Assembly: GCA_963924565.1 (NCBI GenBank)
Contig: OZ004609.1
Coordinates: 11,160,001-11,224,000, forward strand
DNA length: 64,000 nt
Origin: Ascidiella aspersa
Taxonomy: Eukaryota
Direction of reading: 5' to 3'
Shown here: positions 9,363-63,858 of the stretch, piece after piece
Numbering within the stretch: position 1 is the first letter of the stretch
Layout of the letters: each line of letters starts with the position of its first letter
Position numbers and translations under genes: made by a program
The notes under the pieces: model-generated
Seen by the model: only the letters and a program-made list of their open reading frames with translations
Databases searched by the model: none
Told to the model about the DNA's origin: nothing

Positions 9363-10454
9363 AAATATGCTGTTGCTACCAGGCATAGTATATTTAAAAC
9401 AGGTTCCTCTGGCAATATATATTATTTTCTACCAACGTTTCGGCTTGCTATCCGGCAAGCCTTCGTCAGGGACTGACACACAAGGCCAACAAGACACAAA
9501 GTAAAATCACAATAAGAAAAAAGGAGATAAAAAAGTGCGAGACGCGTTCAAAATTCACAGCGATAAAACAACGTTCAAAATTTAAAGCGATAAGACAACG
9601 CGAAATTTAGTGGTTATCTTTTAGCACCTGTCGGTACGGCGCTGGAAACAAAACGTCCGTTTTGATGTTCATCGTATCCGGCGTTCGGTGTATCTGCCAG
9701 GATTCGCGAAACAGGCGTTTTCGGTAGTCGCTCTCTCTTGCAAGAACAGTGCCCCCATCGAAATTAATGTCGTATTGACGACTGCAAGCGTGCTGCGCCA
9801 AGGCTGACTTCTTGGCGTCGTTGTTGTTCACATCGCGAATATGTTCTTTCCTGCGTGTGTTGAACGACCTTCATGTTTCGCCAATGTACATCATCGGGCA
9901 ATCGCCGCATGGAATTGTATAGATGACGCCCTTCGTGTTGTTGACGTCTATTGGGTCTTTAGGATGCGACAGCAAGTGGCGTAACGTTGTAATAGGTTTT
10001 ACACCAACTGCGATGCCGAAGTCCCGTAACATGCGCCGCAGGACGTCCGTCAGGCCTGGAATATAAGGTAAGGTAACGTACCCTTCCCATTTGGTATCAG
10101 TAGGTGAGTTTGTCGCACGCTGTTGTCTCAGTAAGGACGGTGGATACCCATTGAGACGCAAGGACTCGCGAACCCGTCGAAGCTCCTCCTCTAACACGCC
10201 CGGTTCCGAGGTTAACCGCCTGGCCTGATCGAACAGCGCCGTTACCACTCCCCGCTTCTGGTATACAGGATGGTGAGACGCGAAGTTCAGGTACCTCCGT
10301 ATGCTCGTTGGTTTATGGTAAACCCGAGATTGTAGGTGGCCATCGCTGGTTCTCATCACCTGTACATCTAAAAATGGAAGTTTCCCATTAACCTGCTCCT
10401 CCATAGTAAAGCTGAAAATAATATATATTGCTAGAGGAACCTGTTTTAAATATA
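9363..10454 (-). mobile_element. 5'-truncated Penelope-like retroelement (RT C-terminus + GIY-YIG endonuclease + pLTR)
   Basis: The frame 10412->9607 reads FTMEEQVNGKLPFLDV...VYHKPT...YLNFASHHP...LRLNGYP...LPYIPG...GVIYTIPCGDCPMMYIGET*RSFNTRRKEH...SALAQH, with one in-frame TGA at 9873-9871. There is a 41-bp inverted terminal copy (9389-9429 / 10414-10454) and a flanking direct repeat ATATATAAGTTTCAAT (9347-9362 / 10450-10465). Confidence 0.92.
9432..9472 (-). ncRNA. Minimal type I hammerhead ribozyme motif in the Penelope pLTR
   Basis: The minus strand reads ccCTGACGA-aGGCTTGC-cggata-GCAAGCC-GAAACGTTgg: the conserved CUGANGA and GAAA cores, a perfect 7-bp stem II and a palindromic AACGTT in place of stem III. 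Stem I is very short. Confidence 0.8.
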
Positions 10455-10670
10455 TAAGTTTCAATTTTGGTGGTTTTTGACAGAATGTGTAATGTGCAAA
10501 GTTATTCAAAAAAGAAAAAACTGTTCGCCCGTTGGTTAGGGTTAAATATGTATGTGTTTTAGATGTTGTTTGATGTTACTAAACGTAAAAATTATTTTTT
10601 ATTTTTTCATGAAAATCAATGCATCCTGCAAACAGACGTTCATCAGACGTAAACACTTATTACTAAATAC

Positions 10671-36200: not shown

Positions 36201-39200
36201 GTGCTGAAAATAATCAGCAACTATAAGCACACCACGAGTATTTTTGACGACTTCGCTCATTACGAACGCCGTGAACAGGAGGAAGAACTTTTAAGGGCAA
36301 AGCGCACCGATCACAATGTAAGTTTTTGTTCATTATTTACCACCTCAATAAACTTTTATTGAGGTCTGAATCTTGCTCCGACTCTAGAGCATGTATATCT
36401 CTCATAACTAAATATGGTGGATAGTCAAAAATCCACATGGAGATGTCATATAATTCATCCATCTACAAAACATGGTTGCAAAACATTCCTCTATATTCTA
36501 TTCCACCTTTACCATTTACAGTTTGCAGTCTTGTCGGTTTCAAAATTTGGTAATGCCCATGTTCATGTTGGACTCGTGACTCAGTAGTCTGATATGAACT
36601 ATGCCATCCTACAAGTTACATTTTGCGCAACAACCCTTAAACTAATCTCTCCATAAATGATTTGGGCATGGATTTGTCTTTTTAGTTGGAGATATAATTT
36701 TGTTTTATGTAACTTAAATTAAATCTATTGTTTCATCACTTCTACATGTTGGGTCATTCCATTGCTACTGGTACAGTGGTGGCACCCTATGTCATAGATT
36801 TTTTAAAAATTTTATATGTATAATCTCCCTGCAATTCTATGAAAAGTGATACCAATTTTATCGAAATTGGTCAAGTACTTTTTGAGATATCAGCGACTGA
36901 AAAATGGCCCTTTTTAGACTTTTTCGCGCTCATGCGTAAAATTTAACTGCAAATTTTGTTTGACCTATTATGAAAGTGTTTTAAATGGTAACTAAAAAAT
37001 TCCAATGCATATCAGTTCTTCAAAGTAAGCAGATTCTAAGAAGATATATTGTTGTTTGTTTTTGTATCACTACAGGCCACCAAGTGGCTAGTTTCACACA
37101 TGACTATTTGTGATCAGTCATGCATGACAAAACTTTGATTGGTTATAGCGAAAAATACTCTACTTCGATTTTTCTGCAACTTAGCTTAAATGAAAGGTAA
37201 TTTTGTTGGCTTTCTACCCTCCAAATATGAAGTGGGATATTTGAGTAGAAATTACAAAATTTCATTGCTTTGTAATAGATTGCGAAAAAGCTTTATGACG
37301 CACTATTATAATGTATAACTATGAAATGTGATTGTCTGGTGATTCCAGGAAGTCAAAAAAACTTATAGAAATCTGCTGGTACAGCAATGCACACTAGAAG
37401 CCAATACATAGACCAATAATTTTAATCAATGTATGGCAAAATTGCTATTAATTGTAATGTTTTGCGACTGAAAACTTTATGCACGGTCAGCGCACAATAC
37501 TACTTATACTAACACAGAGGAGGATTCTATACGATGACAAAGAGAAAGATATTATACAATGTTAAGTACAAGTATATATGTATATTGGAAGACATCTCAT
37601 ATTCAAGTAACAGACTACCAAGAGCTTAAATCTTTAGCAATGTTATTGCAAAGCACTGCCCCTCATTCAGTTACACCAGAGGCAGGAACCTTTTTAACTA
37701 AGGGAGCCATAATAGTCAAATATTCTTTTGTGTTTTCATGAGAGCCACAAACATCTAGCTTTATGTTGGCAAAAACTAGTAAATTGTGCAAGGCCATTTA
37801 TTTTGTTCTCATTTAAAGGACAGAACATAATGTGCATTAAATTTAATTAGTTAGGTTTGCACAAATTTGATTACGGAGTTCGGTTAAAAGAATTGGGCTT
37901 TTCGAATATAAAGAGATTCGCTAGAAGAAGGAAAAAAATTTGCTACTATGAGTAATAAAAAGAAAATATAGAGTTAGGAAAGCGGTTGTGGCCGCTTGCA
38001 ATTTTATTCAGATCATGCTGAGAAATGATAGCTTACATTTATCTGCAAGCAAGATTCTTTTATCAAAAGAGCCATATGGCCTTACCAAAAGAACCATACA
38101 TAACTCACTGGCCTCAAAGGCAAGACCAATATTTTTTCCATTGGACCATGTTTTGTGCCAGATTGCATGTCATGTTTTGTTAACATCAAGAGGACATACC
38201 AAATCTCCAAGTCTGATGGAAGCCTGTTTTTTGAAAAGTGGTGTGACTGGTCTCACACTCTTTGTCATCGTATAGAATCCTCCTCTGTTAGTATAAGTAG
38301 TATTGTGCGCTGATTGTGCATAAAGTTTTCAATCGCAAATCATTAAAATTATTGGCAATTTTCGCCATACATTGATTGAAATTATTGGTCTATGTATTGG
38401 CTTCTAGTGTGCATTACTGTTCCAGCAGACTTCTATAAGTTTTTTGACTTCCTGGAATCACCAGACAATCACATTTCATAATTATACATTATAATAGTGC
38501 GTCATAAAGCTTTTTCGCCAATCTATTACAAAGCAATAAAATTTTGTAATTTCTACTCAAATATCCCACTTCATATTTGGAGGGTAGAAAGCCAACAAAA
38601 TTACCTTTCATTTAAGCTAAGTTGCAGAAAAATCGAAGTAGAGTATTTTTTTCGCTATAACCGATCAAAGTTTTGTCATGCATGACTGCTCACAAATAAT
38701 CATGTGTGAAACTAGCCACTTGGTGGCCTGTAGTGATACAAAAACAAACAACAATATGTCTTTTTAGAATCTGCTTACTTCGGAGAACTGATATGCATTG
38801 GAATTTTTAAGTTACCATTTAAAACACCTTCGTAATTGGTCAAACAAAATTTTCAGTTAAATTTTATGCATGAGCGATCACGAAAAAGCCTAAAAAGAGC
38901 CAATTTTCAGTCGCTGATATCTCAAAAAGTACTTGACCAATTTCGGTAAAATTGGTATCACTTTTCATAGAATTGCAGGGAGATTCTACAAATAAAATTT
39001 AAAAAAAATCTATGACGTATGGTGCCACCACTGTACCAGTAGCAATGGAATGACCCTGTTGGTAAACCAAACCAGCATGTCCGAATTATGACATAGCACC
39101 AAGACAACTGCAAGATCTATTTTTCCAGGATAATTGATTAAGTAAGCTAAGTTGCTTTTACCATGAAGTTTAAAAAAAAAGCTGTCTATTATGAAATTTT

Positions 39201-46897: not shown

Positions 46898-47154
46898 CTC
46901 TCTTCAGATCAATCAAGTTCTATGTACTGCATTATGCGTGCTTTTTTCTTTCCCAATTCTCTCGGAAAACATGATAAACAATTTAGCTAGGATTTGAGAC
47001 AAGCCTCAAATGTGACGTCCCAGCTTCTCTCTTCAGATCACAAAAGTTCTATGTACTGCATTATGCGTGCTTTTTTCTTTCCCAATTCTCTCGGAAAACA
47101 TGATAAACGATTTAGCTAGGATTTGAGGCATGCTTCAAATGTGCCGTCCCAGCT
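46898..47154. repeat. ~128-bp tandem duplication
   Basis: CTCTTCAGATCA...AAGTTCTATGTACTGCATTATGCG...GTCCCAGCT occurs twice in direct tandem. Confidence 0.9.
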
Positions 47155-47779: not shown

Positions 47780-49513
47780 GTGGCTGTGCTGTAAAAAATC
47801 GCCTTTTATAATTTCCCTGTTTCTTGTTTTCATTTTTGTAATAAACGTGAAAGCATGCCGCTAATTTTTGTCTTTATTAGTACGATACCGTTTTTGTGAT
47901 TGTTGAACAAAAGCGTGGCTTGAAAAAATTAGTGCCTCACCATCTAGGAACGTCACCGCACGTCACTGCCTACAATACAGTAACACTGATGATAGGCTAG
48001 GACTACAAAACTCAAACCTTGCTTTATTAATGAGCCTTTTTACATGTGAAGTTCGGTTGCAATTTTTCTGGCACAATGTTTGCAAATAACAATCAAGAAG
48101 AAAGGGCTGGCGGGCGATTTGTTGGAAAACCGTTAAACCAGCAATTCAGCATGTTTAATGACTACAGTAATTTTTCGAAAATAAATTCCACATCTTGCCT
48201 AAAAGTCTTGTCGAAAATACAAGCAAATAATTCGAAATACGAAAAAAGAGGACATTTGGGCATTTTTGAGCGTCCTCGGAGGACTATTAACTTTTCTTGA
48301 AAAAATGGGACAAATCCTCCCAAAAGAGGACATATGATAGGCCTACCTATGGCTCCCTATGTCTGATTCCCGTCTCAAGGTTACAACGTCAACCCAAGAC
48401 TACTTTTTCACCAGTCCAATTTGTTAGCATTTAGAAAAGGCGGACGTTCGAGGCGCGCCCTAGATTAGACTGATTAGACCCTTAAAGGCATGTGCATGTC
48501 GGACTCGGGTAGTTTTACGAGTTCTTACTCGAGTCCTGAGTCGGACTTCAACAAAACAAACCAACTCCTCGAGTCCGACTCGGACTCCGCAACCCTGATT
48601 GACATACTTGGTCGATTGGCAGAAATGATCGATTTCTTTTATTTCCACCCCCTCCTCTTTCGAAAACCTTTCTAGGTTTCGGATCAAAATTGGTAGAAAG
48701 CTCGTTGGTTTTGGGCTGCTTCACCAACTTTTATTCCATAGGAAATTGCCTTTCTTTTCTCGTCAGTGCATAGTTTTTCTTTCAGCTTGTTGCTCCAGTC
48801 CCTGTGAAACTTACCTTCCGCTAAGGCCCTCTCTCTCATTTCGGCTCTGGCTTTTTGTCTCCGGCCTTTTTGTTTTAGCACAGGCCCTCTCTTTCTTTTC
48901 GGCTCTGGCTTTTTTGGTCTCCGGCCTTTGTTTAGCTCAGCTCTTTTTAATTTTGGCTGCGACTCATGGTCTTGGGCATACTCTCAACCTCAGATCCAGT
49001 GTTGTAAACAAATCGTAATAAATGTCCAAGTTGCAAATCAAGTCATTTAAAAACAAAAAAAAAAAATCACCGCAAAAATGTTTACAATATAAAACTATGT
49101 GAAGTTGAACTACAAATCAATGGTTATTTGAGTTAATCCATGTATATAAAAATTGCAGGACAATTATCAAAATTAGTAAAGTTATTTCAATTCAAGTAAC
49201 AAGCCCATTTTACCCAAACGTTCGGCTAGAAAGCATTTTGACGTGAAATAAGCAATCAACTACTTTAACGAAAACAATTTTTAGGAAATACCAAAGTCCA
49301 AGTAAAGTCGATTTGAAACACAAAAAATCCCAAAATCAAGTCATTAATCAGCGTTGAAGAAAACATGGCGGTTAAAAATATAATTGACCTATTTAAATAA
49401 TTAAACGCAATAAATATTGATTATATTTTCGAGTGACAAACATCTTGAAACAAGCATTAAGGAGACAAAATAATTTTCTTTTTATGTTTTATCGCTTTTA
49501 TCTTTACTTGATT

Positions 49514-49557
49514 TTTACACTGATGATGGCATGAGTTATTGCTGAAACGTCTGTAAA
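49514..49557 (+). ncRNA. Minimal type I hammerhead ribozyme motif (tandem array unit 1)
   Basis: TTTACA-CTGATGA-tGGCA-tgagttat-TGCT-GAAA-CGTC-TGTAAA: 6-bp stem I, intact core, 4-bp stem II, GUC cleavage triplet and a palindromic ACGT stem III. Confidence 0.82.
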
Positions 49558-50582
49558 TTGCGTAATATCGATTTAATCGAATATTATGACTTTGATATTT
49601 TTATTGAAATTATCAAAAGAATTACATGTAAAGATGAGGTAATTATTAAACATATCAACAAATATATTTAAGTACATTTAGGTTCATGTCAAGTCGTTCT
49701 TTTTGAAGTTTCAAGTCACTTTCAAGTCTAAAAATCGAGTAAACCAAATCAATATTTGCTATATTAAAGCTAAATGTTTCGATCAAGTACTGTTTATTTA
49801 AAAAAACACCGACTTTAGTCAAGGGATTTTCTTTTGTATTTGCAACACTGAACAAGCAGTCATTTACCAATTGCTCGGGGTATTTGGCACGCGACTTTTT
49901 TTGCTTAGAACATCATGGTTCTGGCTTATTGGCTCGGGACTCTTTATTTCTGCTCAGGTCATATTGGCTCTGGCTTATTGGCTCGGAACATTTCTTTATG
50001 CTCAGGCCATTTAGGCTCTGGCTCATAGGCTCGGGACTCTTCATTTTTCCTCAGGCCCATTTGGCTCTGGCTCATTGGCTCGGGACTCTTCATTTTTGCT
50101 CAGGCCATTATGGCTCTGGCTCATTGGCTCGGGACCCATTATGTTTGCTTGGTCATTACGACCCCGAAATCATTGGCTCAGGTCCTATTGTAATATCACC
50201 CTCCTGTCTGTATGACCCGAATAACAAATAGAAATGGAAATATTGAAACAAATTGAAAGTAGTACGACATACCGCGATACAACGAAATCAGACTGAAAAA
50301 TGTTACCATTTCAGGAAACATATGACACAAGAAAAATGTTCAGATAAGGTACAACATGTTTTCCAACAATACAGACAAGTGTGTGAGCCTTGGGCTAATT
50401 GTGTTTTAAGCACAGGCCGAAAATGTTCATAAAAAGTACAACATGTTTTCCAACGATACAGACAAGTGTGTTGGCCTTTGGCTAATTGTTTTTCAAGCAC
50501 AGGCCGAAAATGTTCATTGAAAGTACAACATGTTTTCAACAATGCAGACAAGTGTGAGCGCCTTAGGCTAATTGTGCTTTAA

Positions 50583-51215
50583 GCACAGACCATCTCTTAC
50601 TTCGGCTCTGGCTTTTTGGTGGCCGGCCATTTCAATTCAAGCACAGGCCCTCTCTCTCACTTCGGCTCTGGCTTTTAGTCTCCGGCCTTTTTATTTTAGC
50701 ACAGGCCCTCTCTCTCATTTTGGCTCTGGCTTTTGGTCTCCGGCTTCTTTTATTTTAGCACAGGCCCTCTCTCTCACTTCGGCTCTGGCTTTTGGTCTCC
50801 GGCCTTTTTATTTTAGCACAGGCCCTCTCTCTCATTTCGGCTCTGGCTTTTTGTCTCCGGCCTTTTTATTTTAGCACAGGCCCTCTCTCTCATTTTGGCT
50901 CTGGCTTATGGTCTCCGGCCTTTTTTTATTTTAGCACAGGCCCTCTCTCTCATTTCGGCTCTGGCTTTTTGTCTCCGGCCTTTTTACTTTAGCACAGGCC
51001 CTCTCTCTCATTTCGGCTCTGGCTTTTTTTATTTTAGCACAGGCCCTCTCTCTCATTTCGGCTCTGGCGTTTTGTCTCCGGCCTGTTTTATTTTAGCACA
51101 GGCCCTCTCTCTCATTTCGGCTCTGGCTTTTTGTCTCCGGCCTTTTTGTTTTAGCACAGGCCCTCTCTTTCATTTCGGCTCTGGCTTTTTTGGTCTCCGG
51201 CCTTTTTTTTTTTTA
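50583..51215. repeat. ~58-nt minisatellite, ~11 copies
   Basis: GCACAGGCCCTCTCTCTCATTTCGGCTCTGGCTTTTTGTCTCCGGCCTTTTTATTTTA repeated. About 5 further copies lie at 52827-53115 and about 2 at 48825-48930. Confidence 0.95.
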
Positions 51216-52004
51216 GCTCAGCTCTTTTAATTTTTGCTGCGGCTCATAGTATTGGGCCTATTCTCATTTACCCTCAGATCCAGTGTTGTAAACAAATCGT
51301 AATAAATGTCCAGGTTTCAAATCAAGTCATATCAAAATAAAACAAAAAATTACCGTAAAAATGTTTACAATATGAAACTATGTGAAGCCAAACTACAAAT
51401 CAATGGTTATTTGAGTTATCCCATGTATATAAAAATTGCAGGCCAAATATCAAAGTTATTTCAATTCAAGTAACAAGCCCATTTTACCCAAACGTTCGGC
51501 TAGAAAGCATTTTGACGTGAAATAAGCAATCAACTATAATGAAAACAATTTTTAGGAAATACCAAAGTCCAAGTAAAGTCGATTTTAAACACAAACAAGC
51601 CCAAAATCAAGTCATTAATCAGCGTTGAAGAAAACATTGCGGTTAAAAATATAATTGACCTATTTAAATAATTAAAATCAATAAATATTGATTATATTTT
51701 CGAGTGACAAACATCTTGAAACAAGCATTAAGGAAAAAAAAAATTTCCTTTCAACAAATATATTTCAAGTACATTTATGTTCATGTCAAGTCGTTCTTTT
51801 TGAAGTTTTAAGTCTAAAAATCGAGTAAACCAAATCAATATTTGCTATATTGAAGCTAAATCTTTCGATTAAGTACTGTTTATTTAAAAAAACACTGACT
51901 TTAGTCAAGCGATTTTCTTTTGTATTTACAACACTAGACAAGTAGTCATTTCCCAATTGCTCGGGGTATTTGGCACGCGACTTTTTTTGCTCAGAACATC
52001 ATGG

Positions 52005-52375
52005 TTCTGGCTTATTGGCTCGGGACTTTTCTTTTTGCTCAGACATTTTGGCTCTGGCTTATTGGCTCGGGACTTTTCTTTTTGCTCAGGCCATTTAGGC
52101 TCTGGCTCATTGGCTCGGGACTTTTATATTTTGGCTCAGGCCAATTAGGCTCCGGCTCATTGGCTCGGGACTCTTCATTTTTGCTCAGGCCATTTTGGCT
52201 CTGCCTTATTGGCTCGGGACTCTTTTTATTTGTGCTCAGGCCCATTTGGCTCTGGCTTATTGGCTCGGGACTCTTTTTAATTTTGCTCAGGCCCATTTGG
52301 CTCTAGCTTATTACCTCGGGACTCTTTTCATTTTTGCTCAGGCCATTATGGCTCTGGCTCATTGGCTCGGGACCC
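52005..52375. repeat. ~49-nt minisatellite, ~8 copies
   Basis: GGCTCTGGCTTATTGGCTCGGGACTCTTTTTATTTTTGCTCAGGCCATTT repeated. Also at 49918-50135 and 54082-54352. Confidence 0.93.
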
Positions 52376-53687
52376 ATTATGTTTGCTTGGCCATTACGAC
52401 CCCGAAATCATTGGCTCAGTACCTATTGTAATATCACCCTTCTGTCTGTGTGACCCGAATAACAAATAGAAATGGAAATATTGAAACAAATTGAAAGTAG
52501 TACGACACACCGCGATACAACGAAATCAGACTGAAAAATGTTACCATTTCAGGAAACATATGACACAAGAAAAATATTCAGAAAAAGTACAACATGTTTT
52601 CCAACAATTCAGACAAGTATGTGAGCCTTTGGTTAATTGTGTTTTAAGCACAGGCCGAAAATGCTCATAAGAAGTACAACATGTTTTCCAACGATACAGA
52701 CAAGTGTGTGAGCCTTCGGCTAATTGTGTTTTAAGCACAGGCCGAAAATGTTCATAAAAAGTACAACATGTTTTCGACAATACAGACAAGTGTGTGAGGG
52801 TGTGCCTTAGGCTAATTGTGTTTTAAGCACAGGCCATCTCTTACTTCGGCTCTGGCTTTTTGGTGTCCGGCCTTTTTTATTTTTGCACAGGTCCTCTCTC
52901 TCATTTCGGCTCTGGCTTTTTGTCTCCGGCCTTTTTAGTTTAGCACAGGCCCTCTCTCTCATTTCGGCTCTGGCGTTTTGTCTCCGGCCTTTTTTATTTT
53001 AGCACAGGCCCTCTCTCTTATTTCGGCTCTGGCTTTTTGTCTCCGGCCTTTTTGTTTTAGCACAGGCCCTCTCTTTCATTTCGGCTCTGGCTTTTTTGGT
53101 CTCCGGCCTTTTTTTTAGCTCAGCTCTTTTAATTTTTGCTGCGGCTCATAGTATTAGGCCTATTCTCATTTACCCTCAGATCCAGTGTTGTAAACAAATC
53201 GTAATGAATGTCCAGGTTTCAAATCAAGTCATATAAAAATAAAACAAAAAATCACCGTAAAAATGTTTACAATATAAAACTATGTGAAGCCAAACTACAA
53301 ATCAATGGTTATTTGAGTTATCCCATATATATAAAAATTGCAGGCCAACTATCAAAGTTATTTCAATTCAAGTAACAAGCCCATTTTAACCAAACGTTCG
53401 GCTAGAAAGCATTTTGACGTGAAATAAGCAATCAACTACTTTAACGAAAACAATTTTTAGGAAATACCAAAGTCCAAGTAAAGTCGATTTGAAACACAAA
53501 CAAGCCCAAAATCAAGTCATTAATCAGCGTTGAAGAAAACATTGCGGTTAAAAATATAATTGACCTATTTAAATAATTAAACGCAATAAATATTGATTAT
53601 ATTTTCGAGTGACAAACATCTTGAAACAAGCATTAAGGAAACAAAAAAATTTTCCTTTTGTTTTATCGCTTTTATCTTTACGGGATT

Positions 53688-53731
53688 TTTACACTGATGA
53701 TGGCATGAGTTATTGCTGAAATGTCTGTAAA
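53688..53731 (+). ncRNA. Minimal hammerhead ribozyme motif (tandem array unit 3)
   Basis: Same as the copy at 49514 except GAAATGTC (one C>T change in stem III). Confidence 0.7.
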
Positions 53732-56700
53732 TTGCGTAATATCGATTTAATCGAATATGATGACTTTGATATTTTTATTGAAATTATCAAAATAATTACA
53801 TGTAAAGATGAGGTAATTATTAACCATTTCAACAAATATATTTCAAGTACATTTAGGTTCATGTCAAGTCGTTCTTTTTGAAGTTTCAAGTCTAAAAATC
53901 GAGTAAACCAAATCAATATTTGCTATATTAAAGCTAAATGTTTCGATCAAGTACTGTTTATTTTAAAAAACACTGACTTTAGTCAAGAAATTTTCTTTTG
54001 TATTTACAACACTGGACAAGCGGTCATTTGCCAATTGCTCGGGGTATTTGGCACGCGACTTTTTTTGCTCAGAACATCATAGTTCTGGCTTATTGGCTCG
54101 GGACTTTTCTTTATGCTCAGGCCATTTAGGCTCTGGCTCATTGGCTCGGGAATTTCATATTTTGGCTCAGGCCATATAGGCTCTGGCTCATAGGCTCGGG
54201 ACTCTTCATTTTAGCTCAGGCCATTTTGGCTCTGGCTTATTGGCTCGGGACTCTTTTTATTTTTGCTCAGGCCATTTTGGCTCTGGCTTATTACCTCGGG
54301 ACTCTTCATTTTTGCTCAGGCCATTTTGGCTCTGGCTTATTGGCTCGGGACCCATTATGTTTGCTTGGCCATTGCGACCCCAAAATCATTGGCTCAGATC
54401 CTATTGTAATATCACCCTCCTGCCTGTGTGACCCGAATAACAAATAGAAATGGAAATATTGAAACAAATTGAAAGTAGTACGACATACCGCGATACAACG
54501 AAATCAGACTGAAAAATGTTACCATTTCAGGAAAAATATGACACAAGAAAAATGTTCAGACATGTTTTCCAACAATACAGACAAGTGTGTGAGCCTTTGG
54601 CTAATTAAGTTTTAAGCACAGGCCGAAAATGTTCATAAAAAGTACAACACGTTTTCCAACAATACAGAAAAATGTTTAAGCGTCTTTTTTCCGAACATCA
54701 TAGCTCTGGCTTATTGGCTCGGAACTTTTCTTTTTGCTTAATCCATTTAGGGTCTGGTTCAATGGTTCAGGACTTTTATATTTTTGCTCAGGCAATTATG
54801 GCTCTGTCTCATTGGCTCGGGACCCGTGTTTGCTTGGTCATTACGATCCCGAAATCATTGACTCAGGACCTATAGTGTAATATCACCCTTCTGTCTGGTT
54901 GACCCGAATGACAAATAAAATGGAAATATTTTATCAAACTGAAAGTATTACGACACATCGTAATACAACAAAACCAAACTCCAAAATGTAAAACCATTTA
55001 AGAAAACAGGACAGAAGAATAATTTCAGAAAAAATAGAACATGTTTTATATTGGTAACTTTGTGCTACCGTTTTTTTATGTATGGCAGGCCCTCCCAATC
55101 TTTGGCTCTGGCTTTTCATATGTTATCTCCTTACAAAAGTATTTTGAATAATATTTGTAATTTAAGTATGTCGTCCTGTATAAAGACAAGATATCTTGTA
55201 ATTTATTTAGAAACGTTTCACGATTTATAATGAAATCAAAAACATGGAATTGTGCTATATAAAATTTACCTGATTCCTAGGAAATTTGGGTAAAAATAAT
55301 TTTCGATTTACTTGTGATACCTAAAAAGTAAATGAAGAACTTTTTGGTTGTGGGTGTATATTTAATTTACAACAGTATTTCGGACGAAAACACCTTGCTG
55401 CATGCTGCATTAAGTGAATTAACTGGCTTTAGAAAACATTTTGTATAGTACTGCATATATATATAATCATCCATGGATTGTTCATAGTAGCAAAATTTAA
55501 CCATACACCTAAACCAAACGTTTTGTCCTACTTTGATTTGTTTTTTCCACAAAAGAAGGAAATATGTAGAAGGTTTAGTTATTTAGCTTAGCCTTAGGCA
55601 GTATAAACTGTTTCAGTACTTCGACAACAAATTGTGTTACAATATAAATCCAACAAAAAATAGGCATTGCAAATTATAAAGCACTTTTAAACTCCGCTCG
55701 CCTTATGCAACTACATTTTCAGAAGAACGCGAGACTTCAATAGGAAATAGTCATAATTACGGATAAATTAATTGTCAATATAACAAATATCTTGAAATAA
55801 TGGTTCTTAAAATTTTAGTATGTGTAGAAAGAAAAGAAAAAAAATAGCACTTCGGTACATGCCATTCCATTTCAATCATCATAACAATCACCCCTACTGC
55901 AAGACGAGACAATATATAGGTAAATGTCATAGGATAGTACTGTAAGTTATCTAAACAGGAGTTTAATTGACAGTGTGCAGTTAAGCTTCGTATGCGAGCC
56001 TGCATGTTTTTTATATGAATGTATATTGTCTGAAATTACAATAGTTCTGCGAAACACCTTAAGAATTTCTGGAGGTACACAGTTTGAGAAATACGGATTT
56101 AGATAAAGGTAAAGGGCTTTATGTAAGGGCGTATCCAGAAATCCAAAGAGGGTCCCGAATTTTTAACTTAGGGAATTCACTGTTTTCCGTCTGACGTTAA
56201 TGGCGTCATAAAAAGTGACAGGTATGACGTAATAAAATAGCGATTGTAATGACGAACACGTTCGTCGTCGACACTCTTCACAGGCGCTAGTTGCGAAATC
56301 GCTTAGTGTGCAAATTTCAGGCGAAAAATGAAAACAAGTTCGCGAAATTTATGTGATTGACTTTGCTAGAACCATGTACGGGACTACGCTAAATTACAAG
56401 CACGTCTTTCACACCTGCAATTCTAAACGAAGATTGTTTTCCAGGGTGTTATGCGATTAGCGCAACATCTTCGCCAAGCTGTGAGCCAAGTTAGCTGAAA
56501 TACAAGCACGTCTTACACCAACAATATTAGCGCGGACAGCGAGAAACACCAGCACCGCCTAACTCGACGTTTTGAGCGAGAAAGAAATCGAAGACCGCTT
56601 GATTTATTGCTGTTAATTGTCGAACACGCGCTTGCAGCCAACCCGAATGAATGAAAGGCGAAAAAGAAAAAATATCCTGCGTTTTCGATTGACCAAATAA

Positions 56701-59079
56701 GAAAAGAAAAACAGCGTTTGCATTTCATTTTGGTTTCGCATTAGCTTAAGACGCGTGACCCAATAACATTAAAAACATTGCCGCTTCCGACGATGAGTTA
56801 AACCTCGACGAAAACGAACAAAAAACGATAATATCACCTACCAAAAGGAGGATCCGAAAAAAATGACAAAAAAAAATTAGTTTCAAATTTATATTACATA
56901 AAAGCGTTAAACACATGTTGTGCAATTACTTTTTTGAGCTTAAAACTGGAATCGAGACCTTCTGGTAACAAGCAAATTGCCTCAAATTCTTCGGGTTTCT
57001 TAGTTTTGTCTCTAATTTAAATACTATGTTCGCCTAATGAATGTATAAACTGCGGCATGTTCAAGCGATAACAAAGGCAAGGAAAAACACGGTTAACCAA
57101 GAGTTGCGATAAGGGTGCAAATTTTTTTTTGACATTTGGCATCACCGCAGGGCGATGCCAGAGTATTATATGTGGCTACACTTGTCTCCCTTTCTTATTC
57201 TATTTCGGAAAACTTTTTCAATAGATAAGCTGTTTTTAAGCGAACTCATGTGCAAACATGCAGATCAAAACCCGTTTAAATTCGCGAAGCATGAAAAAAT
57301 TCATGTATTTGGTTAAATTGGTAGGAATTTTAAAGTGGCATTTAGCCGCATAACAGATTCGTATAATTGCTCGATATAATGGTATTCATAGTCCAATTTA
57401 GTGGAAATCGAACATACTTTTGCTGCCAAGCGTTCCATAAATTGTAAAATTGAAACAAAAATTATTGTCGTAAGAACAATTTTACATTTAATAAAAAGGT
57501 TTGCCAAGGTTCTGAGTCGCACAGTCAAACATACCATATTATGCATCGACCTTTTATGCTATTAAGATTTGATTAACAGAGAGACAGGAACGAAGCAAAT
57601 CCCAAACAAAGTTTTCCTAGGCGCGAACTTTTTTTTAGAATGTTAGAACAAAATTAATGCCCGCCAACTGTAGGGTTGGATGTAGGGGGTTGAAAGAATA
57701 AATTAGATTAAGTGTGTGTGGAAATAACTAATTTTTTGGTAAAATGAGTTTTCGAAAAATTGCATTCATTTTTTTGGAACCAATTTCTTGGTTTTATGGT
57801 TGATTGTTCGGCCGGCATAGTCGCCAGCATTCAGCTATACTGCTGTCCTCTATAATAAGAAAGGAAGAGCCGATTATACGAAGGTTTACGAGTTTGCAAA
57901 GTCTGTCTACTAACGAAACCTTTACAAAAGTCAGCTCTTTAAAATTTGACGAATGAAACAATTAGTTAACGTGGTGGCGTGATATTTACGCAAACTTCGC
58001 ACAGCTCTATTTTACCGTAAAACTTCTTTGCAACAATGGTGGTCACCGGATAGTGTCTCATCGAAGAAGATATAAGAATCAAATCAAAATGGGAAGCGTA
58101 TCCAATTCCGCCATTTATATCGGTTAATTGAAAGTGATAGCGTATAAGTGTACTGTACATACACGAGTGGGAAGTTCTAGATAAAGGCTTGTCGCTGCGG
58201 CGACACTTTTACGGTGCTTGCTTTGAATGTATAGTTAGCCTTTTAGTGTAGTGTCAGCGTTTTTTCGGGCGACCAATTACGTTTCGCGATAATCTTCGCC
58301 TAATAGTTAAGCGTCAATATAATTAGGTGTCTCGAAAAGCTAAATAGTTCTACCAATAATATATTTATGCACCTGTCAGGAACGACCACAGCATTTTTTA
58401 CGAAACACTCCAGATATTTGACATCTCAAACTTTGAAACTTTTTGAAGGTATACAGATGTAATTCAGACAAAAAGCAGCACATGTGCATGTTGTGTCGGA
58501 TCAAATTGGGTTGATCCGATTTAATCGACAGCTGATTTTTAAACTGATTTGTGCCCCGAGTCGAGTTTTAATGGCCCATTGATACAAACAAACAAACAAT
58601 TTGTGCAGTTACGGGATCATGCAATGCCTAGCCCTAGAGGGATTACAAACAATGTTCTTCCGAAAAAGTCGAAGAGCTAGAATATTTTTTGACAGTCGAT
58701 CAATGTTTGGCAACTGGTTTAAATTTTTCCCTGCAGTCACGAAAAGTACTTAAATGGCCAATAGACACTTGGGTTAACATCCATACCAGTAAACAATTGG
58801 GTATTGATTTTGTTACAAGTATAGGTTTGAACTGTTCAGCATTATCGTTTAGATGTAGTGCTACAATCGTCAATGCTCCACAGTTGACACATACGTTAAC
58901 AACCCTTAAACATACCACGCAGAGCTAATGTAGTTACAACAAGATTATATTTATGTACCTGTCAGGAACTATCTTCGCGTAACATTACTGCAATTCGAAC
59001 ATCGTGTGTCGCACTTGTTCCACATCTACATGAAATACATTTCACTGACGAATTTATCATGTTTCCGGTTATTATAAAC

Positions 59080-59700
59080 CAGGGGTCGGCAACCTTTTTC
59101 CAATCGCGGGCCAAACCAAACTTAAAAAGGTCTCTGCGGGCCGCACAAAATGATAACTAAGAATTGTGTTATTAACATATTAGAACAACTGTGAATCAGG
59201 CGGGCCTGGGATATTTTTTGCACTTAAAAACGTGATTAATTACATTTGCAGAGGCAGTAAATTGTTGACGCAAAGCGAATGAAAAGTGTAATAAAACTAC
59301 TTTGAGGGAACGCGATAACATTTAAAGTTAATCTAGCTCAGTGTTTGTTAACTGTTTAAAGTCAAGACGCACCTGGCGAGCGTAGCGAGCGCGATTTTTA
59401 TTTTGGTATACCGGTATTTCTTCTAAATTTAAGTTTTTATTACAATGCCGAAAGTAAAAAAACGTCTACCACGGCGCAACGGTAAAGAATTGCTGATCTA
59501 TAGCTGAAAAGGCAGCATCAAAACGTAAACAAACCGGAGGTATAATGAACATTCGCGCGAAGCGCGAAAATTTTTCGCAGTTAAAATAGTCAAAAAGTAT
59601 TTAAAATAGACTCGTGTCTAATTTGTCAAAGAGACGGCGGGCCGGATGAATTACTTCGGCGGGCCGATCCGGCCCGCGGGCCGTAGGTTGCCGACCCCTG
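59080..59700. mobile_element. Young hAT-type MITE
   Basis: Perfect TIR CAGGGGTCGGCAACCT / AGGTTGCCGACCCCTG; perfect TSD TTATAAAC. Confidence 0.92.
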
Positions 59701-61024
59701 TTATAAACGCTTGTTATAAAAATCAGACATAAACTTTTATGCGAAAAGGTGTATTTTTAAACGATATAGTAATAAGACATGTGGGAAACATCCATAGCAG
59801 TAAACAATTGTTTTTGTTACAAGTATACATGCATTGTTCAGCATTATCTGTGAGATATAGTTCGCCAATCGTTCAATACGCCACTGTTGACCCATACGTC
59901 ATATGTTAGATTTGTAGATATCACGCAGAGCTAAATATTATACCACGATTATATTTACGTTACGTACCTGTCAGGGACGACCAGAGCATGTGGTTTGGGT
60001 TGAACGTCAGAATACAACCAACGTGGTGTAACATTGCTGCAATTCGAACATCGTGTGTTGCACATGTCCCACATCTACATGAAATACATTTTAGTAAAGA
60101 ATTTTAGCAAATTTCCTGTTATAATAAACGCTTGTATGAAAAAAAGCAGACATAAAGCTTGTAGTAAATAGGTATAGTTTTAAACGGCATAATCCCGCAA
60201 AACAAAAAAATTCAACCATAAGCTGAAAAAAAAACATGATAAGGAATTTCAATACCACCGCTATTCTAATTTTTGCAACCTTTATTTTTGAGAGTGAACT
60301 ACCAAAAGTAGATAAGGCGCTGTTTATCTGAAAATATGCTTTCAAATCGTATACGAAAAAAGTGACTTAAAACAATTAGCATTTACTAACATCAATAAAG
60401 AAATGTAACATGTATATTTCTATATATATTAAGTTGGCAATATGTAAGGCCCTGCGGGTCGGATCAGTTTGTAAACAGCTTTCGGGGCTTTTTTGATTTG
60501 TGTGCACCCAATGCGTCAACTCCTCCTTGTAAATTAAAATGTTTGCAAGTTTAAACCAAACAAACGCTATTTATCGCGTATACTTGGGTATTGCTTTTGT
60601 TAGTAGGAAGTGTTGCCGCATTTTGTTGCGAATTTGCGCAAATTTTTGAGACCTGGGCAGTTTTTTCACGAAAGTGTGGAGGCAAAAAAATATATAAAGT
60701 TGTTTTTTTAGTAAAATTCGTCTCCAGTCCTCTTCTGAAACCTATATAATCGCTATTTTGCAAGAATTATTAAATATAATACCTTAACTCAAGTACTACA
60801 TTTTTTATTTTACTGAATGAACTGACAGCAGTTTAAACATACAATTGTTTTTACATTTTACACCAAAGTGGAAACGGAGAATAACCATACGCTAGAAACC
60901 CACAAAATATCATTGTATAATCTTCGGAGTTGTTGCGAAAAATAACTGAAGCTAAAAATACAAAGCACCAATGTCCGGTTTAATTTTCCAAATACTATTA
61001 AAATCCCTTTGCTATCTGTTAGCT

Positions 61025-61707
61025 CAGGGTGGTTCAAACCCAGGCCCGCGGGCCATTATTGTAATACATAAGTTGAGGGTTTAATCAAAGAAATTAACAG
61101 GTTTACTATCGCCCATCATGTTTTAATCCAGGGGTGGTAAGAACGCTTAATCTTGGTATGTGTTAGACCGGTTAGAGGTCGCAGTACGTCGTATATGGAA
61201 CTTTATAAAAAGGGTGTTTTGCCAACTTGTAGCTGTAGGTTACATTTGCGTTTTGTTTTACGTCTTGGACCAGTAAACATAACATAAAAAGTACGACCCT
61301 ATATAATTTTTTTTGCCACTTTAAGGTAAATGAACGATGAAATAGATAGCGCTTGGGGAAAGTATTGTTTTACAGGATTTTAGTGTGACTAAAGGTTAAC
61401 GCCCTGGACCTTTCCATTGTGCGATTCTAGCCAAATAAATCTAGTTAAAAAACATTCTACGCTTATAAATGCAGTATTCTGTTGTCAAATACGCTATTTT
61501 TTCACCATTTTGCCAGCAGTCTCATTATCGCATTACTTTTTAACGATGCTTTTTTTGGTTATCTTTAAACGTTTCATGCCCCGACCTTACGAAAATCGTT
61601 GATCGCTCCTAGCACGCATGTCGCATATATAGCCTACTTTATGTGGCCCACCAAGTATATCAAAAAAATATTGTGGCCCGCGATGCTGTCAACCTTGGAC
61701 CACCCTG
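61025..61707. mobile_element. hAT-type MITE
   Basis: CAGGGTGGTTCAA / TTGGACCACCCTG ends, GGCCCGCG subterminal motifs, decayed TSD TGTTAGCT/TATTAGAT. Confidence 0.72.
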
Positions 61708-63591
61708 TATTAGATTGCAATGGAGTACAATTTTCAGGACTTTGTGAGTGTGTGCGTGTTATATTCAAACAAATATAAATCGTTTTTATTGCATATGCGT
61801 CCCCAAATTGGCGCATAAAAAGACAGAAAAGTTTTTATGTATAATGAGACGCGGGTTGGACCCGGTTGCTGGTTTTTGGTCAGTTGTAAACAGGTTGCGG
61901 GCAGTTTATTTCAGTGTGGCACAGGCGTAAAACGCCAGAAATCTGACATCTTATCCTTGTAAAAAAATATATTGAAGGCATACAGATGTAATTCAGAAAA
62001 GATGCAGCAATACAAATCAAGCATGCATTTAAAAAAAACTGCGAGAGCTGATTTTTGCAAGGACTGAAATCGTTTCGTTTTATTTATGTCAGACCTAACT
62101 TGGTTTTCGCCGAATTAATCGACGGCTGACTTTTTAAACTGATTTCCTGCCCCGAATCGAGTTTTATGGCCCATTGATTCAAACAATTTGTGCACTTACT
62201 CTTACTTGATCACGCAATGCCCTGCGCTATAACCAAAAATGTTCTCCCGAAAAAGTCGAAGAGTGACAAAGTTTTTTGACAGTCGATCAGTGCTTGGCAA
62301 CCGTTTTAACTCGCTGCGGACCTATAAGGTTTGAAAATTTTTAGCACAGGCACGAAAAAAATAATAAAATGGACAATAGATACGTGGATAAACAATTAAA
62401 CATCCATAGCAGTAAATAAAAGGGTACTTTGTTACAAGTTGGCATGCATTTTCCAGTATTTATTCTGTATTAGACATAGTGCTCCAATCGTTCAACGCGC
62501 CACGAGTGACACATGTACATCACATGTTAGCAACCCTAGAGTATACCACGCAAGAGCCAAATAGTTATATCAAGGAAAGACCAGAACATGCGGTTTAGGT
62601 TGAAGGTTAGACTACAGCCAACGTCGCATAACATTGCTGCAATTGGAACATCGTGTGCCGTACTTGTTCCATATCTGCATAAAATACGTTTTATTAAATA
62701 TTTTTTTTTAGTGTCTCCGGTTGTTATAAAATAAACGCTTATGAGAAAAAAAACATACACAAGGCTTTTATGCAAAAAAGGTGTATTTTTAGACGGTATA
62801 GTTTTGTAAAACAAAACTCGTGTTACGCAGAACAAGAAAAAAATCGATTAGGTTTAAAAAAAAAACATTAAAAGAAGGTTTTGAATACAGCCGCTATTCT
62901 AATTTTTGCTCGTGTTGCAACACGCAATACCATGTTTTATGAGAATGAAATAACAATATTACATAATGACGCAGGAATTATTTTATCGTTTGTGTGTGCG
63001 TTATTTTTTCTATATTTAAGCGTTTGTACTTCTGTTGTTATTTTTAATCTTCCTTTTTTATTTAGTAACCATCGCTTTTCCACTTTAGCACCTCGCCTTC
63101 ACGTTTATACTTCTTATCTCGTTTTCCGTACTCTTATCTCGTTTTGGCACCTATTAGTTACTTTAGGAACTGACACCATTTTGTGGTTATTTGTGGAACC
63201 AGGGCGAAAAATAAGGAGTCAAGTTACGGGGAAGCCAGAACAAGATGCGAGACTATTGCAATTTACGTTTTTGTCATTTTTTAGGGCTAGGCCGATTTTA
63301 TTAATTTCGTCTTATGTTGGTTTATTTACTTTGCGTCTATATTAATTCAGTTCAAAGGCACTTCATGTAGCGCTTGGCATCCGACAGGCCGTTACGTAGG
63401 GTTCCTGTAAATAATGGCGCTGTTTGACTTAAACAATTCGCATTTTCTAATTTATAACGGTTGATCGGTGCCAGAGTTAATCTATACCACTGCTTTGCAA
63501 CCGTTTTTTACCCACGGCTTACAAGGTTTTCCCTTTGTCCAGCAAAACCCCGAAAAAAGTACCTCAATCGCCAATAGAAACGCGGGTAAAC

Positions 63592-63858
63592 ATATCGTCA
63601 CGCTTATAACCAAATTGCCTAAGTCATTTTTTTATGATTTTTAGAGTTTTTGCCTAAGTCACTCCTTGTGGCCATTCCCCACCCATAGACCCCACCCATA
63701 GAAAAAAAGTCATTTTTTGCAAAAACGCATGGAAAATTACCTAAAAAAGGCCTAAGCACATTTTCTATGGAAGGGGATGGTAACAAGGAGAGTCTGAATC
63801 AAAACTTTAAAAATCAGTAAAAATGACTGAGGCAATTTGGTTATGAGCGTGACGATAT
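63592..63858. mobile_element. MITE with ~40-bp TIRs
   Basis: ATATCGTCACGCTTATAACCAAATTGCCTAAGTCATTTTT is inverted at 63819-63858. Confidence 0.8.

What the first reader, a model, noticed from the sequence alone, without database searches (positions are those of the whole stretch)
48825..55118. Hammerhead-ribozyme-bearing higher-order satellite (retrozyme-like or rolling-circle array)
Seen: three head-to-tail ~2-kb units. Units 1 and 3 carry a minimal type I hammerhead on the + strand (49514-49557 and 53688-53731; CUGAUGA/GAAA core, 6-bp stem I, GUC triplet). Known: minimal hammerheads with a palindromic stem III occur in Penelope pLTRs and in non-LTR retrozymes/satellites, and cleave as dimers in multimeric transcripts. 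Inference: a read-through transcript could pair the two motifs as a double hammerhead, because ACGU pairs with AUGU (the C>U change gives a G-U wobble). This would excise a ~4.17-kb RNA (49552-53725) that could circularise. The unit is much larger and more composite than typical few-hundred-nt retrozyme monomers, so it may be an undescribed repeat system or a passively amplified ribozyme.
Basis: partly seen in the sequence, partly recalled or inferred. Interest (0 to 1): 0.8.

Follow-up and report, generated by a model that had tools for sequence, protein, structure and literature searches.

The report
Dead Penelope fragment copied within a local repeat
The two hammerhead-ribozyme motifs are real, but they sit in a short dead piece of a Penelope-like jumping gene that landed in a 2-kb stretch of DNA and was copied along when that stretch was duplicated, so this is an ordinary, already described kind of sequence.

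Summary
The motif is not chance (1 of 200 shuffles gave a hit), but no Rfam hammerhead model matches it.

The motif does not belong to the repeat. It lies in a 147-nt stretch (49475-49621) that is the 5'-truncated 3' end of a Penelope-like retroelement (PLE). This PLE is dispersed on all nine large contigs and encodes an RT tail plus GIY-YIG. Other PLE families in the genome carry the same minimal hammerhead downstream of their ORF, with covarying stems. This is the class described by Cervera and De la Pena (2014).

The 2-kb unit is not a satellite. It occurs at only four places in the genome. A diverged single copy on C2 lacks the PLE piece, and unit 2 lost it through a later deletion.

RNA reads show no transcript across the junctions and no pile of ends at the predicted cut.

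Earlier notes of this scan report the same PLE hammerheads elsewhere in this genome.

Verdict: a passively duplicated PLE relic. Interest is low.

The parts
48824..55118 (.). Local tandem array: three ~2-kb composite units plus a diverged partial fourth piece (about 54680-55118)
   Evidence: unit starts 48936, 51217, 53119; 89-97% identity. (the unit occurs at only four places in the genome).
49475..49621 (+). PLE fragment in unit 1: the 5'-truncated 3'-end piece of Penelope-like element 'family A'. It lacks about the last 20 nt of the longest 3' terminus.
   Evidence: query 36-182 matches dispersed copies at 90-95%. (common 3' end, variable 5' truncation). (the C2 paralogue lacks it, and unit sequence resumes at about 49623).
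49514..49557 (+). Minimal hammerhead motif, copy 1: stem I of 6 bp, CUGAUGA, an unpaired U, stem II of 4 bp starting with G-U, GAAA, palindromic ACGU, C17 at 49551
   Evidence: Model R1 scores 53.5 bits, but this copy was in the model's training alignment.
53651..53795 (+). The same PLE fragment, copied with unit 3 (94.6% identical to the unit-1 copy)
53688..53731 (+). Minimal hammerhead motif, copy 2: C15.2 changed to U, so the palindrome is broken (AUGU)
   Evidence: (fails the palindrome rule). (R1 scores 47.2 bits).
51745..51755 (.). Deletion scar in unit 2. About 165 nt are missing: the whole PLE fragment plus about 30 nt of original unit sequence that the C2 paralogue keeps.
   Evidence: alignment A2

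Best explanation
The two hammerhead motifs are relics. I infer this order of events from the sequence comparisons.
1. A Penelope-like retroelement (PLE, here called family A) inserted a short, 5'-truncated copy of its 3' end (147 nt, 49475-49621) into a stretch of about 1.6-2 kb that already held three kinds of minisatellite.
2. That stretch was then duplicated in tandem to three units plus a remnant, carrying the fragment along.
3. Unit 2 later lost the fragment in a deletion of about 165 nt.
4. The whole region was also copied, inverted, about 580 kb away.

In active PLEs the minimal hammerhead lies downstream of the ORF, in the region that becomes the pseudo-LTR. It is thought to cut tandem precursor RNA by pairing two copies through the ACGU palindrome. 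That role comes from the literature and was not shown here.

At this locus the motif is a passenger. I found no sign that it is transcribed on the + strand together with the repeat, and copy 2 has already lost the palindrome.
For: The motif belongs to a dispersed element.
- Window 49475-49621 matches copies on contigs C1-C9 at 90-95% identity: 49 matches listed, from 745 first-look candidates of which 40 were scored.
- In other loci the stretch is the 3' end of a longer element (at least 1.5 kb in L028), with variable 5' truncation and a common 3' end.
- Two-armed inverted insertions are common. In 6 of 7 close pairs, only one arm has the 34-nt tail.
- The ORF just upstream (L028:433-1338, 301 aa) has a YVDD motif and matches Pfam GIY-YIG at 25.5 bits, over the 22.6 cut-off. 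RVT_1 gives a partial 22.9 bits.
- The genome holds many PLEs: 136 protein matches, ORFs up to 880 aa, and tandem copies 2671 nt apart.

The hammerhead is a conserved PLE feature.
- A core...GAAACGU motif lies 200-550 nt downstream of the ORF end in 5 of 6 loci and 18 of 20 loci from other PLE families.
- On 13 representatives, 76.6% of cells pair, against 57.0% in shuffles (0 of 500 shuffles reach it) and 25-45% in slid registers. The covariation score is 0.519 against 0.196 (0 of 500). The two inner stem I pairs are paired in 13 of 13 sequences, with 3 pair types each. C3-G8 changes to U3-A8 in 3 sequences.
- Among 30 family-A copies, departures from the majority letter are 1.4% in the hammerhead against 5.3% and 6.7% in the flanking PLE sequence (Fisher p = 2e-13).
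- Model R1 matched all 150 candidates that the genome search scored, which is the cap.

History of the locus.
- The C2:25.8 Mb paralogue is a single unit without the PLE piece, and it keeps the roughly 30 nt that unit 2 lacks.
- The C3:11.79 Mb copy carries the PLE piece plus window flanks from 55355 to 63595 in collinear, inverted order at 82-91% identity.

The unit is low-copy. Three probes gave 8, 12 and 9 matches, all at the window, C3:11.79 Mb, C2:25.8 Mb or C9:9.58 Mb, plus one 61-nt piece on C1.

Reads.
- DNA depth is about 1427 over the hammerhead against 16-20 on the flanks.
- RNA depth is zero at 49356-49451 and at 49644-49895.
- RNA reads on the PLE part run on into other copies' flanks, and no place shows a pile of starts or ends.
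Against: - The RNA test is thin: one run, about 6% of it read, 96 reads laid. The library's strandedness is not on record. Ordinary RNA-seq does not capture 5'-OH ends specifically.
- There is some transcription over 48940-49355 (2-8 reads, all with the first mate on +), so the array is not silent.
- Copy 1 is letter-for-letter the majority family-A hammerhead: its R1 score of 53.5 bits is shared by many genomic copies. If family-A hammerheads cleave, copy 1 could too.
- The 13 sequences used for covariation were picked by a pattern that fixed the core and GAAACGU, so core conservation there is by selection. Only the stems are a free test.
- The 30 copies are the best-scoring hits and are related to each other, so that p-value overstates independence.
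- For the full-length family-B ORF (837 aa), Pfam reported only RVT_1 (38.2 bits) and no GIY-YIG at E<=0.01.
- No target-site duplication could be read at the insertion.
Confidence: 0.9

Rival explanations
1. A read-through + strand transcript of the array pairs the two hammerheads (ACGU with AUGU) as a double hammerhead, releasing a 4.17-kb RNA (49552-53725) that may circularise. This would be a giant retrozyme-like system.
For: - Both motifs are in the same orientation, 4174 nt apart. This is the same order of distance as PLE tandem copies in this genome (2671 nt).
- Copy 1 is identical to the majority family-A motif.
- The proposed 4-bp pairing is formally possible.
- Some RNA reads fall on the unit.
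Against: - No RNA read covers 49356-49451 or 49644-49895, and none joins unit to PLE piece. No ends pile up at the cut site. The reads on 48940-49355 are all of one direction and stop before the motif.
- The helix III duplex is weak: -1.3 kcal/mol for copies 1+2.
- The monomer's lowest-energy fold (-8.9 kcal/mol) buries part of the core, against -5.8 for the hammerhead-like fold.
- In vitro cleavage of metazoan PLE min-hammerheads is reported as low even in dimers (PMC4209133, Results read).
- The other copies of the unit spread by segmental duplication with their flanks, not as RNA-derived units.
Confidence: 0.04
2. The array is a large non-autonomous element that the PLE machinery mobilises through the PLE 3' end it carries.
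For: - It carries part of a PLE 3' region, which is where the PLE reverse transcriptase would be expected to act.
- Related units exist on three contigs.
- A 2026 preprint argues that animal retrozymes derive from PLE pseudo-LTRs (10.64898/2026.07.22.740005, abstract seen).
Against: - The PLE piece is internal to the unit and lacks the end of the PLE terminus.
- The C2 copy has no PLE piece.
- The C3:11.79 Mb copy includes about 8 kb of non-repeat flank in collinear order.
- The unit occurs at only four places in the genome.
Confidence: 0.03
3. The motif is a chance match to a loose hammerhead pattern.
For: - No Rfam hammerhead model matches.
- Stem II is weak and starts with a G-U wobble.
Against: - Only 1 of 200 shuffles gave a hit.
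- The same architecture recurs with covarying stems downstream of the ORF in several PLE families.
- The hammerhead varies less than its flanks among copies.
Confidence: 0.01

Closest known systems
Minimal hammerhead motifs of metazoan Penelope-like elements (Cervera and De la Pena 2014, PMC4209133; abstract, Results, Discussion and part of Methods read)
   Same: - Type I, with no real helix III, only a palindromic ACGU.
- One extra nucleotide between A9 and 10.1.
- Located in the PLE 3' / pseudo-LTR region.
- Most copies are single motifs in truncated PLEs.
- Pairs on opposite strands lie 100-700 bp apart.
- A U3-A8 core variant is present in another family of this genome.
   Different: - Family A has G10.1-U11.1 instead of the usual G10.1-C11.1.
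- Its helix II has 4 bp rather than the 7-8 bp reported for Schistosoma.
- Its helix I has 6 bp, which is longer.
- Here the fragment was carried passively into a local tandem duplication.
Non-LTR retrozymes of animals (Cervera and de la Pena 2020, PMC7229834, abstract seen; Li et al. 2026 preprint, abstract seen)
   Same: Type I hammerheads in head-to-tail repeats, with dimeric action proposed for some. The preprint argues that they derive from PLE pseudo-LTRs.
   Different: - Retrozyme units are about 170-400 nt, each with its own hammerhead, in high copy number, and expressed as linear and circular RNA.
- Here the unit is about 2 kb, only 2 of 3 units carry the motif, the unit occurs at four places in the genome, and no matching RNA was seen.
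Penelope-like elements with a C-terminal GIY-YIG endonuclease (Craig et al. 2021, PMC8557442, passages read)
   Same: The parent element shows an RT plus GIY-YIG ORF, strong 5' truncation, adjacent inverted 5'-truncated copies, a tail of about 34 nt at one end only, tandem copies, and a hammerhead near the 3' end.
   Different: The window holds only a 147-nt non-coding remnant of it. I did not place the family in a named PLE clade.

Membership tests
PLE-associated minimal hammerhead (min-HHR) | Core boxes CUGANGA and GAAA, with a UH cleavage triplet | tested here: met
   Both copies have CUGAUGA, GAAA and GUC. The descriptor hits copy 1.
PLE-associated minimal hammerhead (min-HHR) | Helices I and II flank the core and are kept by compensatory changes among families | tested here: met
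   13 sequences: 76.6% of cells paired, 0 of 500 shuffles reach this, slid registers give 25-45%, and 11 of 15 pairs show changes on both sides.
PLE-associated minimal hammerhead (min-HHR) | [quoted passage not shown] | tested here: met
   Column 16 is occupied in 13 of 13 sequences, and it is U in the window copies. For one family (L059) a bulge reading fits as well.
PLE-associated minimal hammerhead (min-HHR) | Conserved G10.1-C11.1 pair | tested here: not met
   The window copies have a G-U wobble. Across families the pair is G-C in 10 of 13, G-U in 2 and unpaired in 1. This is a typical feature rather than a strict one. G10.1 itself is kept.
PLE-associated minimal hammerhead (min-HHR) | Palindromic 15.2-16.2 (ACGU) in place of helix III | tested here: met
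   Copy 1 has ACGU, and 13 of 13 family representatives have ACGU, although the search pattern required it. Copy 2 has AUGU, so it does not meet this feature.
PLE-associated minimal hammerhead (min-HHR) | Lies in the 3' / pseudo-LTR region of an element encoding RT and GIY-YIG | tested here: met
   for family A. for other families (5 of 6 and 18 of 20 loci).
PLE-associated minimal hammerhead (min-HHR) | Self-cleavage, as a dimer | not testable with these tools
   No pile of RNA read ends at 49551/49552, at a depth of about 50 reads. This is a weak negative.
Rfam hammerhead families (RF00163 and relatives) | Score at or above the family's gathering threshold | tested here: not met
   No match at gathering score, none at E<=10 on 48000-56000, and RF00163 found none in the genome. 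These models expect a helix III.
Non-LTR retrozyme | Tandem units of about 170-400 nt, each with a hammerhead, in many copies | tested here: not met
   Units are 1.9-2.3 kb, 2 of 3 carry the motif, and the unit occurs at four places in the genome.
Non-LTR retrozyme | Expressed as unit-length linear and circular RNA | tested here: inconclusive
   No junction-spanning or back-joined RNA reads. Only about 6% of one run was read.
Satellite DNA / higher-order repeat | A long array of many copies of the unit | tested here: not met
   Three units plus a remnant. DNA read depth on the unit corresponds to about 2.5-3 copies (my arithmetic).
Penelope-like element (the parent of the fragment) | Reverse transcriptase plus GIY-YIG endonuclease in one ORF | tested here: met
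   L028 ORF: GIY-YIG at 25.5 bits (cut-off 22.6), a partial RVT_1 at 22.9 bits, and a YVDD motif. The family-B full ORF gave RVT_1 at 38.2 bits only.
Penelope-like element (the parent of the fragment) | 5' truncation, inverted 5'-truncated partner, one-sided tail | tested here: met
   The tail is on exactly one arm in 6 of 7 close pairs.

The most novel reading that the evidence does not exclude
The array is transcribed on the + strand in some tissue or stage, and the two PLE-derived hammerheads act together across 4.17 kb. They would release, and perhaps circularise, a kilobase-scale non-coding RNA. That would be an accidental, host-encoded 'giant retrozyme' built from a dead PLE fragment and a tandem duplication.
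Probability: 0.03. Interest if true: 0.5.

Novelty: new member of a known kind. Interest (0 to 1): 0.12.

Why it matters
It matters little in itself. The case shows how hammerhead motifs come to sit in tandem repeats without any ribozyme biology: a truncated Penelope-like insertion is simply carried along by a local duplication.

It is a useful caution for scans. A hammerhead inside a repeat should first be checked against the genome's own PLE 3' ends.

The side results are consistent with selection on the motif in active elements, which agrees with the 2014 description. These are the covarying min-hammerheads in at least seven PLE families of one genome, and the lower variation of the hammerhead compared with its flanks among copies.

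Tried and rejected
- Rfam hammerhead models gave nothing. I did not read this as absence, because these models expect a helix III. I used my own descriptor and a model built from this genome's PLE motifs instead.
- I first took the inverted pairs of the 147-nt stretch for terminal inverted repeats of a MITE or foldback element. I rejected this once longer copies showed 5' truncation and an RT/GIY-YIG ORF.
- I first took unit 2 for the empty insertion site. The C2 paralogue rejects this: it lacks the PLE piece but keeps about 30 nt that unit 2 has lost, so unit 2 is a deletion derivative.
- I looked for a target-site duplication at the insertion and could not read one.
- Chance origin is rejected.
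- ORFs in and around the array are low-complexity readings of the repeats. Pfam on seven larger ORFs of the window gave only a YTH domain, far from the array.
- Folding is nearest-neighbour arithmetic only and decides nothing.
- I did not identify the organism. Earlier notes of the scan call it a sea squirt, which I did not test.
- I did not place family A in a named PLE clade, did not look for a full-length family-A copy, and did not use the large protein searches.
- Papers: the supplements of PMC4209133 were not seen. They hold the motif alignments, the species list and the cleavage gels, and they may show whether this animal group was already covered. The paper by Lunse and co-workers (2017) on PLE hammerheads cleaving as dimers is recalled only. 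The search listed only papers that cite it.


Full report
**What is in the sequence**

The window is G000:C3:11160001-11224000, from a 308.6-Mb eukaryotic assembly.

Between 48824 and 55118 there are three head-to-tail units.
- A shared anchor recurs at 48936, 51217 and 53119.
- Register spacings are 1905-2271 nt, and gapped identities are 89-97%.
- A diverged partial fourth piece follows at about 54680-55118.
- Each unit is a composite of a 58-nt array, a unique part, a 49-51-nt array, a second unique part and three 87-nt repeats.

- Each has a 6-bp stem I, CUGAUGA, GAAA and GUC. C17 lies at 49551 and 53725, 4174 nt apart.
- Unit 2 has no motif.

A min-hammerhead descriptor that I wrote finds copy 1 and nothing else in the window. 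It hit in 1 of 200 block shuffles. Copy 2 fails it because C15.2 has become U.

No Rfam hammerhead family matches, whether at gathering score, at E<=10 on 48000-56000, or with RF00163 over the whole genome.

**The motif belongs to a mobile element, not to the repeat**

A search of the genome with 49440-49680 gave two kinds of match. Full-length matches occur only in the window and at one nearby locus. The inner 147 nt (49475-49621) match copies on contigs C1 to C9 at 90-95% identity: 49 matches listed, from 745 first-look candidates of which 40 were scored.

In those loci the stretch is the 3' end of a longer element.
- Copies share one 3' end and are cut off at many different 5' points. The longest seen is about 1.5 kb.
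- Many copies sit as two outward-facing arms. In 6 of 7 close pairs, only one arm has a 34-nt terminal extension.
- Just upstream, L028 has a 301-aa ORF with YVDD. It matches Pfam GIY-YIG over the curated cut-off (25.5 against 22.6 bits) and gives a partial RVT_1 match of 22.9 bits.

These are the published marks of Penelope-like elements (PLEs): 5' truncation, an adjacent inverted truncated copy, a 30-40-bp tail at one end, and a hammerhead in the pseudo-LTR (PMC8557442, passages read).

The genome is rich in PLEs. There are 136 protein matches of 31-100% identity, ORFs up to 880 aa, and tandem copies 2671 nt apart. For one full-length ORF of another family (837 aa), Pfam gave RVT_1 at 38.2 bits but no GIY-YIG at E<=0.01.

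**The hammerhead is a conserved PLE feature in this genome**

I looked downstream of the ORF in other PLE families.
- A core...GAAACGU motif lies 200-550 nt past the ORF end in 5 of 6 loci and in 18 of 20 further loci. L033, L048 and L058 had none.
- A further family's motif sits in the window itself, at 9426-9477 on the - strand.

Thirteen representatives align in register. On the hammerhead structure:
- 76.6% of cells pair, against 57.0% in shuffles (0 of 500 reach it) and 25-45% when the partner is slid by 1-3 columns.
- The covariation score is 0.519 against 0.196 (0 of 500).
- The two inner pairs of stem I are paired in all 13, with three pair types each.
- Stem II pairs show up to four pair types.
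- The C3-G8 pair is replaced by U3-A8 in three sequences.

The search pattern fixed the core and GAAACGU, so only the stems are a free test.

The features match the class described in 2014: an extra nucleotide after A9, a palindromic ACGU instead of helix III, a U3-A8 variant, single motifs in truncated PLEs, and opposite-strand pairs 100-700 bp apart (PMC4209133). One difference is that family A has G10.1-U11.1 rather than G-C.

Among 30 family-A copies, letters departing from the majority make up 1.4% of the hammerhead against 5.3% and 6.7% of the PLE sequence on either side (Fisher p = 2e-13). Before that count I dropped 9 of 39 rows as segmental duplicates. The copies are related to each other and are the best-scoring hits, so the p-value is generous.

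A covariance model built from the 13 sequences scores the two window motifs at 53.5 and 47.2 bits and the third motif, at 9426-9477, at 39.9 bits. Copy 1 and the 9426-9477 motif were both in the alignment it was built from. The model matched all 150 genome candidates that were scored, which is the cap.

**History of the locus**

The unit is not a genome-wide repeat. Three probes from different parts of it gave 8, 12 and 9 matches. All lie at the window, C3:11.79 Mb, C2:25.8 Mb or C9:9.58 Mb, plus one 61-nt piece on C1.
- The C2 copy is a single unit of about 1.6 kb at 70-82% identity. It lacks the PLE piece, and its sequence runs straight from the left flank of the insertion into the stretch that starts at about 49623 in the window.
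- Unit 2 lacks both the PLE piece and about 30 nt of that stretch. It is therefore a later deletion, not an empty site.
- The C3:11.79 Mb locus is an inverted copy of the region. It carries the PLE piece with its hammerhead (three pair-breaking changes), one unit, and window flanks from 55355 to 63595 in collinear order at 82-91% identity.

The inferred order of events is: single unit, then PLE insertion, then tandem duplication, then segmental duplication and the unit-2 deletion.

**Reads**

One RNA run and one DNA run of the same species label were kept as raw reads.

DNA. Depth is about 1427 over 49516-49547 against 16-20 on the unit flanks. With about 6.3-fold coverage read, that is roughly 230 copy-equivalents of the hammerhead and 2.5-3 copies of the unit (my arithmetic).

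RNA. About 6% of the run was read and 96 reads were laid.
- 2-8 reads cover 48940-49355, all with the first mate on +. Five of five reads there carry a 9-nt gap typical of units 2 and 3.
- Depth is zero at 49356-49451 and at 49644-49895.
- Reads on the PLE piece come in both directions and run on into other copies' flanks.
- No place shows a pile of starts or ends.
- Reads that stop matching after 49550 also occur in DNA contigs, so they come from other PLE families rather than from cleavage.

This gives no support for a + strand read-through transcript or for cutting. The test is shallow, however, and it is not end-specific.

**How it most likely works**

Shown here: the motif is part of a truncated PLE copy and was duplicated passively.

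Taken from the literature: in active PLEs, two such motifs pair through ACGU and cut tandem precursor RNA. In vitro activity of metazoan examples is low, and the in vivo role is unproven (PMC4209133; PMC8557442).

At this locus I infer no function.
- Copy 2 has lost the palindrome.
- The 4-bp duplex between the two copies computes to -1.3 kcal/mol.
- The monomer's best fold (-8.9 kcal/mol) is not the hammerhead-like one (-5.8).

**Comparison and verdict**

The closest known thing is the PLE minimal hammerhead. The window copies meet its features, except for the G-C pair at 10.1-11.1 and, in copy 2, the palindrome.

It is not a non-LTR retrozyme, whose units are 170-400 nt, each with its own ribozyme, and which are abundant as genomic copies and as RNA (PMC7229834, abstract). 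It is also not a satellite.

Earlier notes of this scan describe the same PLE hammerheads, two-armed insertions and U3-A8 variant elsewhere in this genome. I re-derived these points independently here.

The finding is a correct observation with an ordinary explanation.

Noticed in passing
window 9347-10465 (- strand); hammerhead at 9426-9477: A second PLE insertion, from another family. Its min-hammerhead has a stem II of 7 bp and scores 39.9 bits with model R1, although it was one of the sequences the model was built from.
   Followed up: partly
window 48824-63595 and G000:C3:11784000-11794303: An inverted segmental duplication about 580 kb away, at 82-91% identity. It includes one repeat unit, the PLE piece and about 8 kb of flank. 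In the paralogue the last unit breaks off inside the start of a PLE piece and joins the equivalent of 55355.
   Followed up: partly
loci L009, L015, L017-L021, L024 (near the ends of C2, C4, C5 and C3): The same family-A PLE fragment is embedded in a larger repeat found many times near contig ends (for example C4 at 55-78 kb, C5 at 68-268 kb, C2 at 0.3-1.0 Mb). This looks like another case of passive amplification, in what seems to be a subtelomeric repeat.
   Followed up: no
loci L006, L007, L008, L011, L022, L026, L030: In two-armed family-A insertions, the 34-nt terminal extension is on exactly one arm in 6 of 7 pairs and on neither arm in one (L008).
   Followed up: partly
loci L043-L051 and L012: One PLE family carries a hammerhead with the U3-A8 core variant in place of C3-G8. 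It has a 6-bp stem II and a very short stem I.
   Followed up: partly
window 48940-49355: Low RNA coverage of 2-8 reads, all with the first mate on the + strand, ending before the PLE piece. The reads carry a 9-nt gap typical of units 2 and 3. The source transcript and its strand are unknown.
   Followed up: no
window 35679-36362 (+): An ORF with a full YTH domain (Pfam 175.5 bits). It is probably an exon of a YTH-family m6A-reader gene, about 13 kb upstream of the array.
   Followed up: no
window 48824-55118: The 58-, 49-51- and 87-nt sub-repeats share short blocks (a GGCTCTGGCT-like block and a CAGGCC block), so they are probably diverged versions of one older minisatellite.
   Followed up: no
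window 46898-47154: Two copies of a 129-nt tandem repeat (93% matches), just upstream of the array.
   Followed up: no
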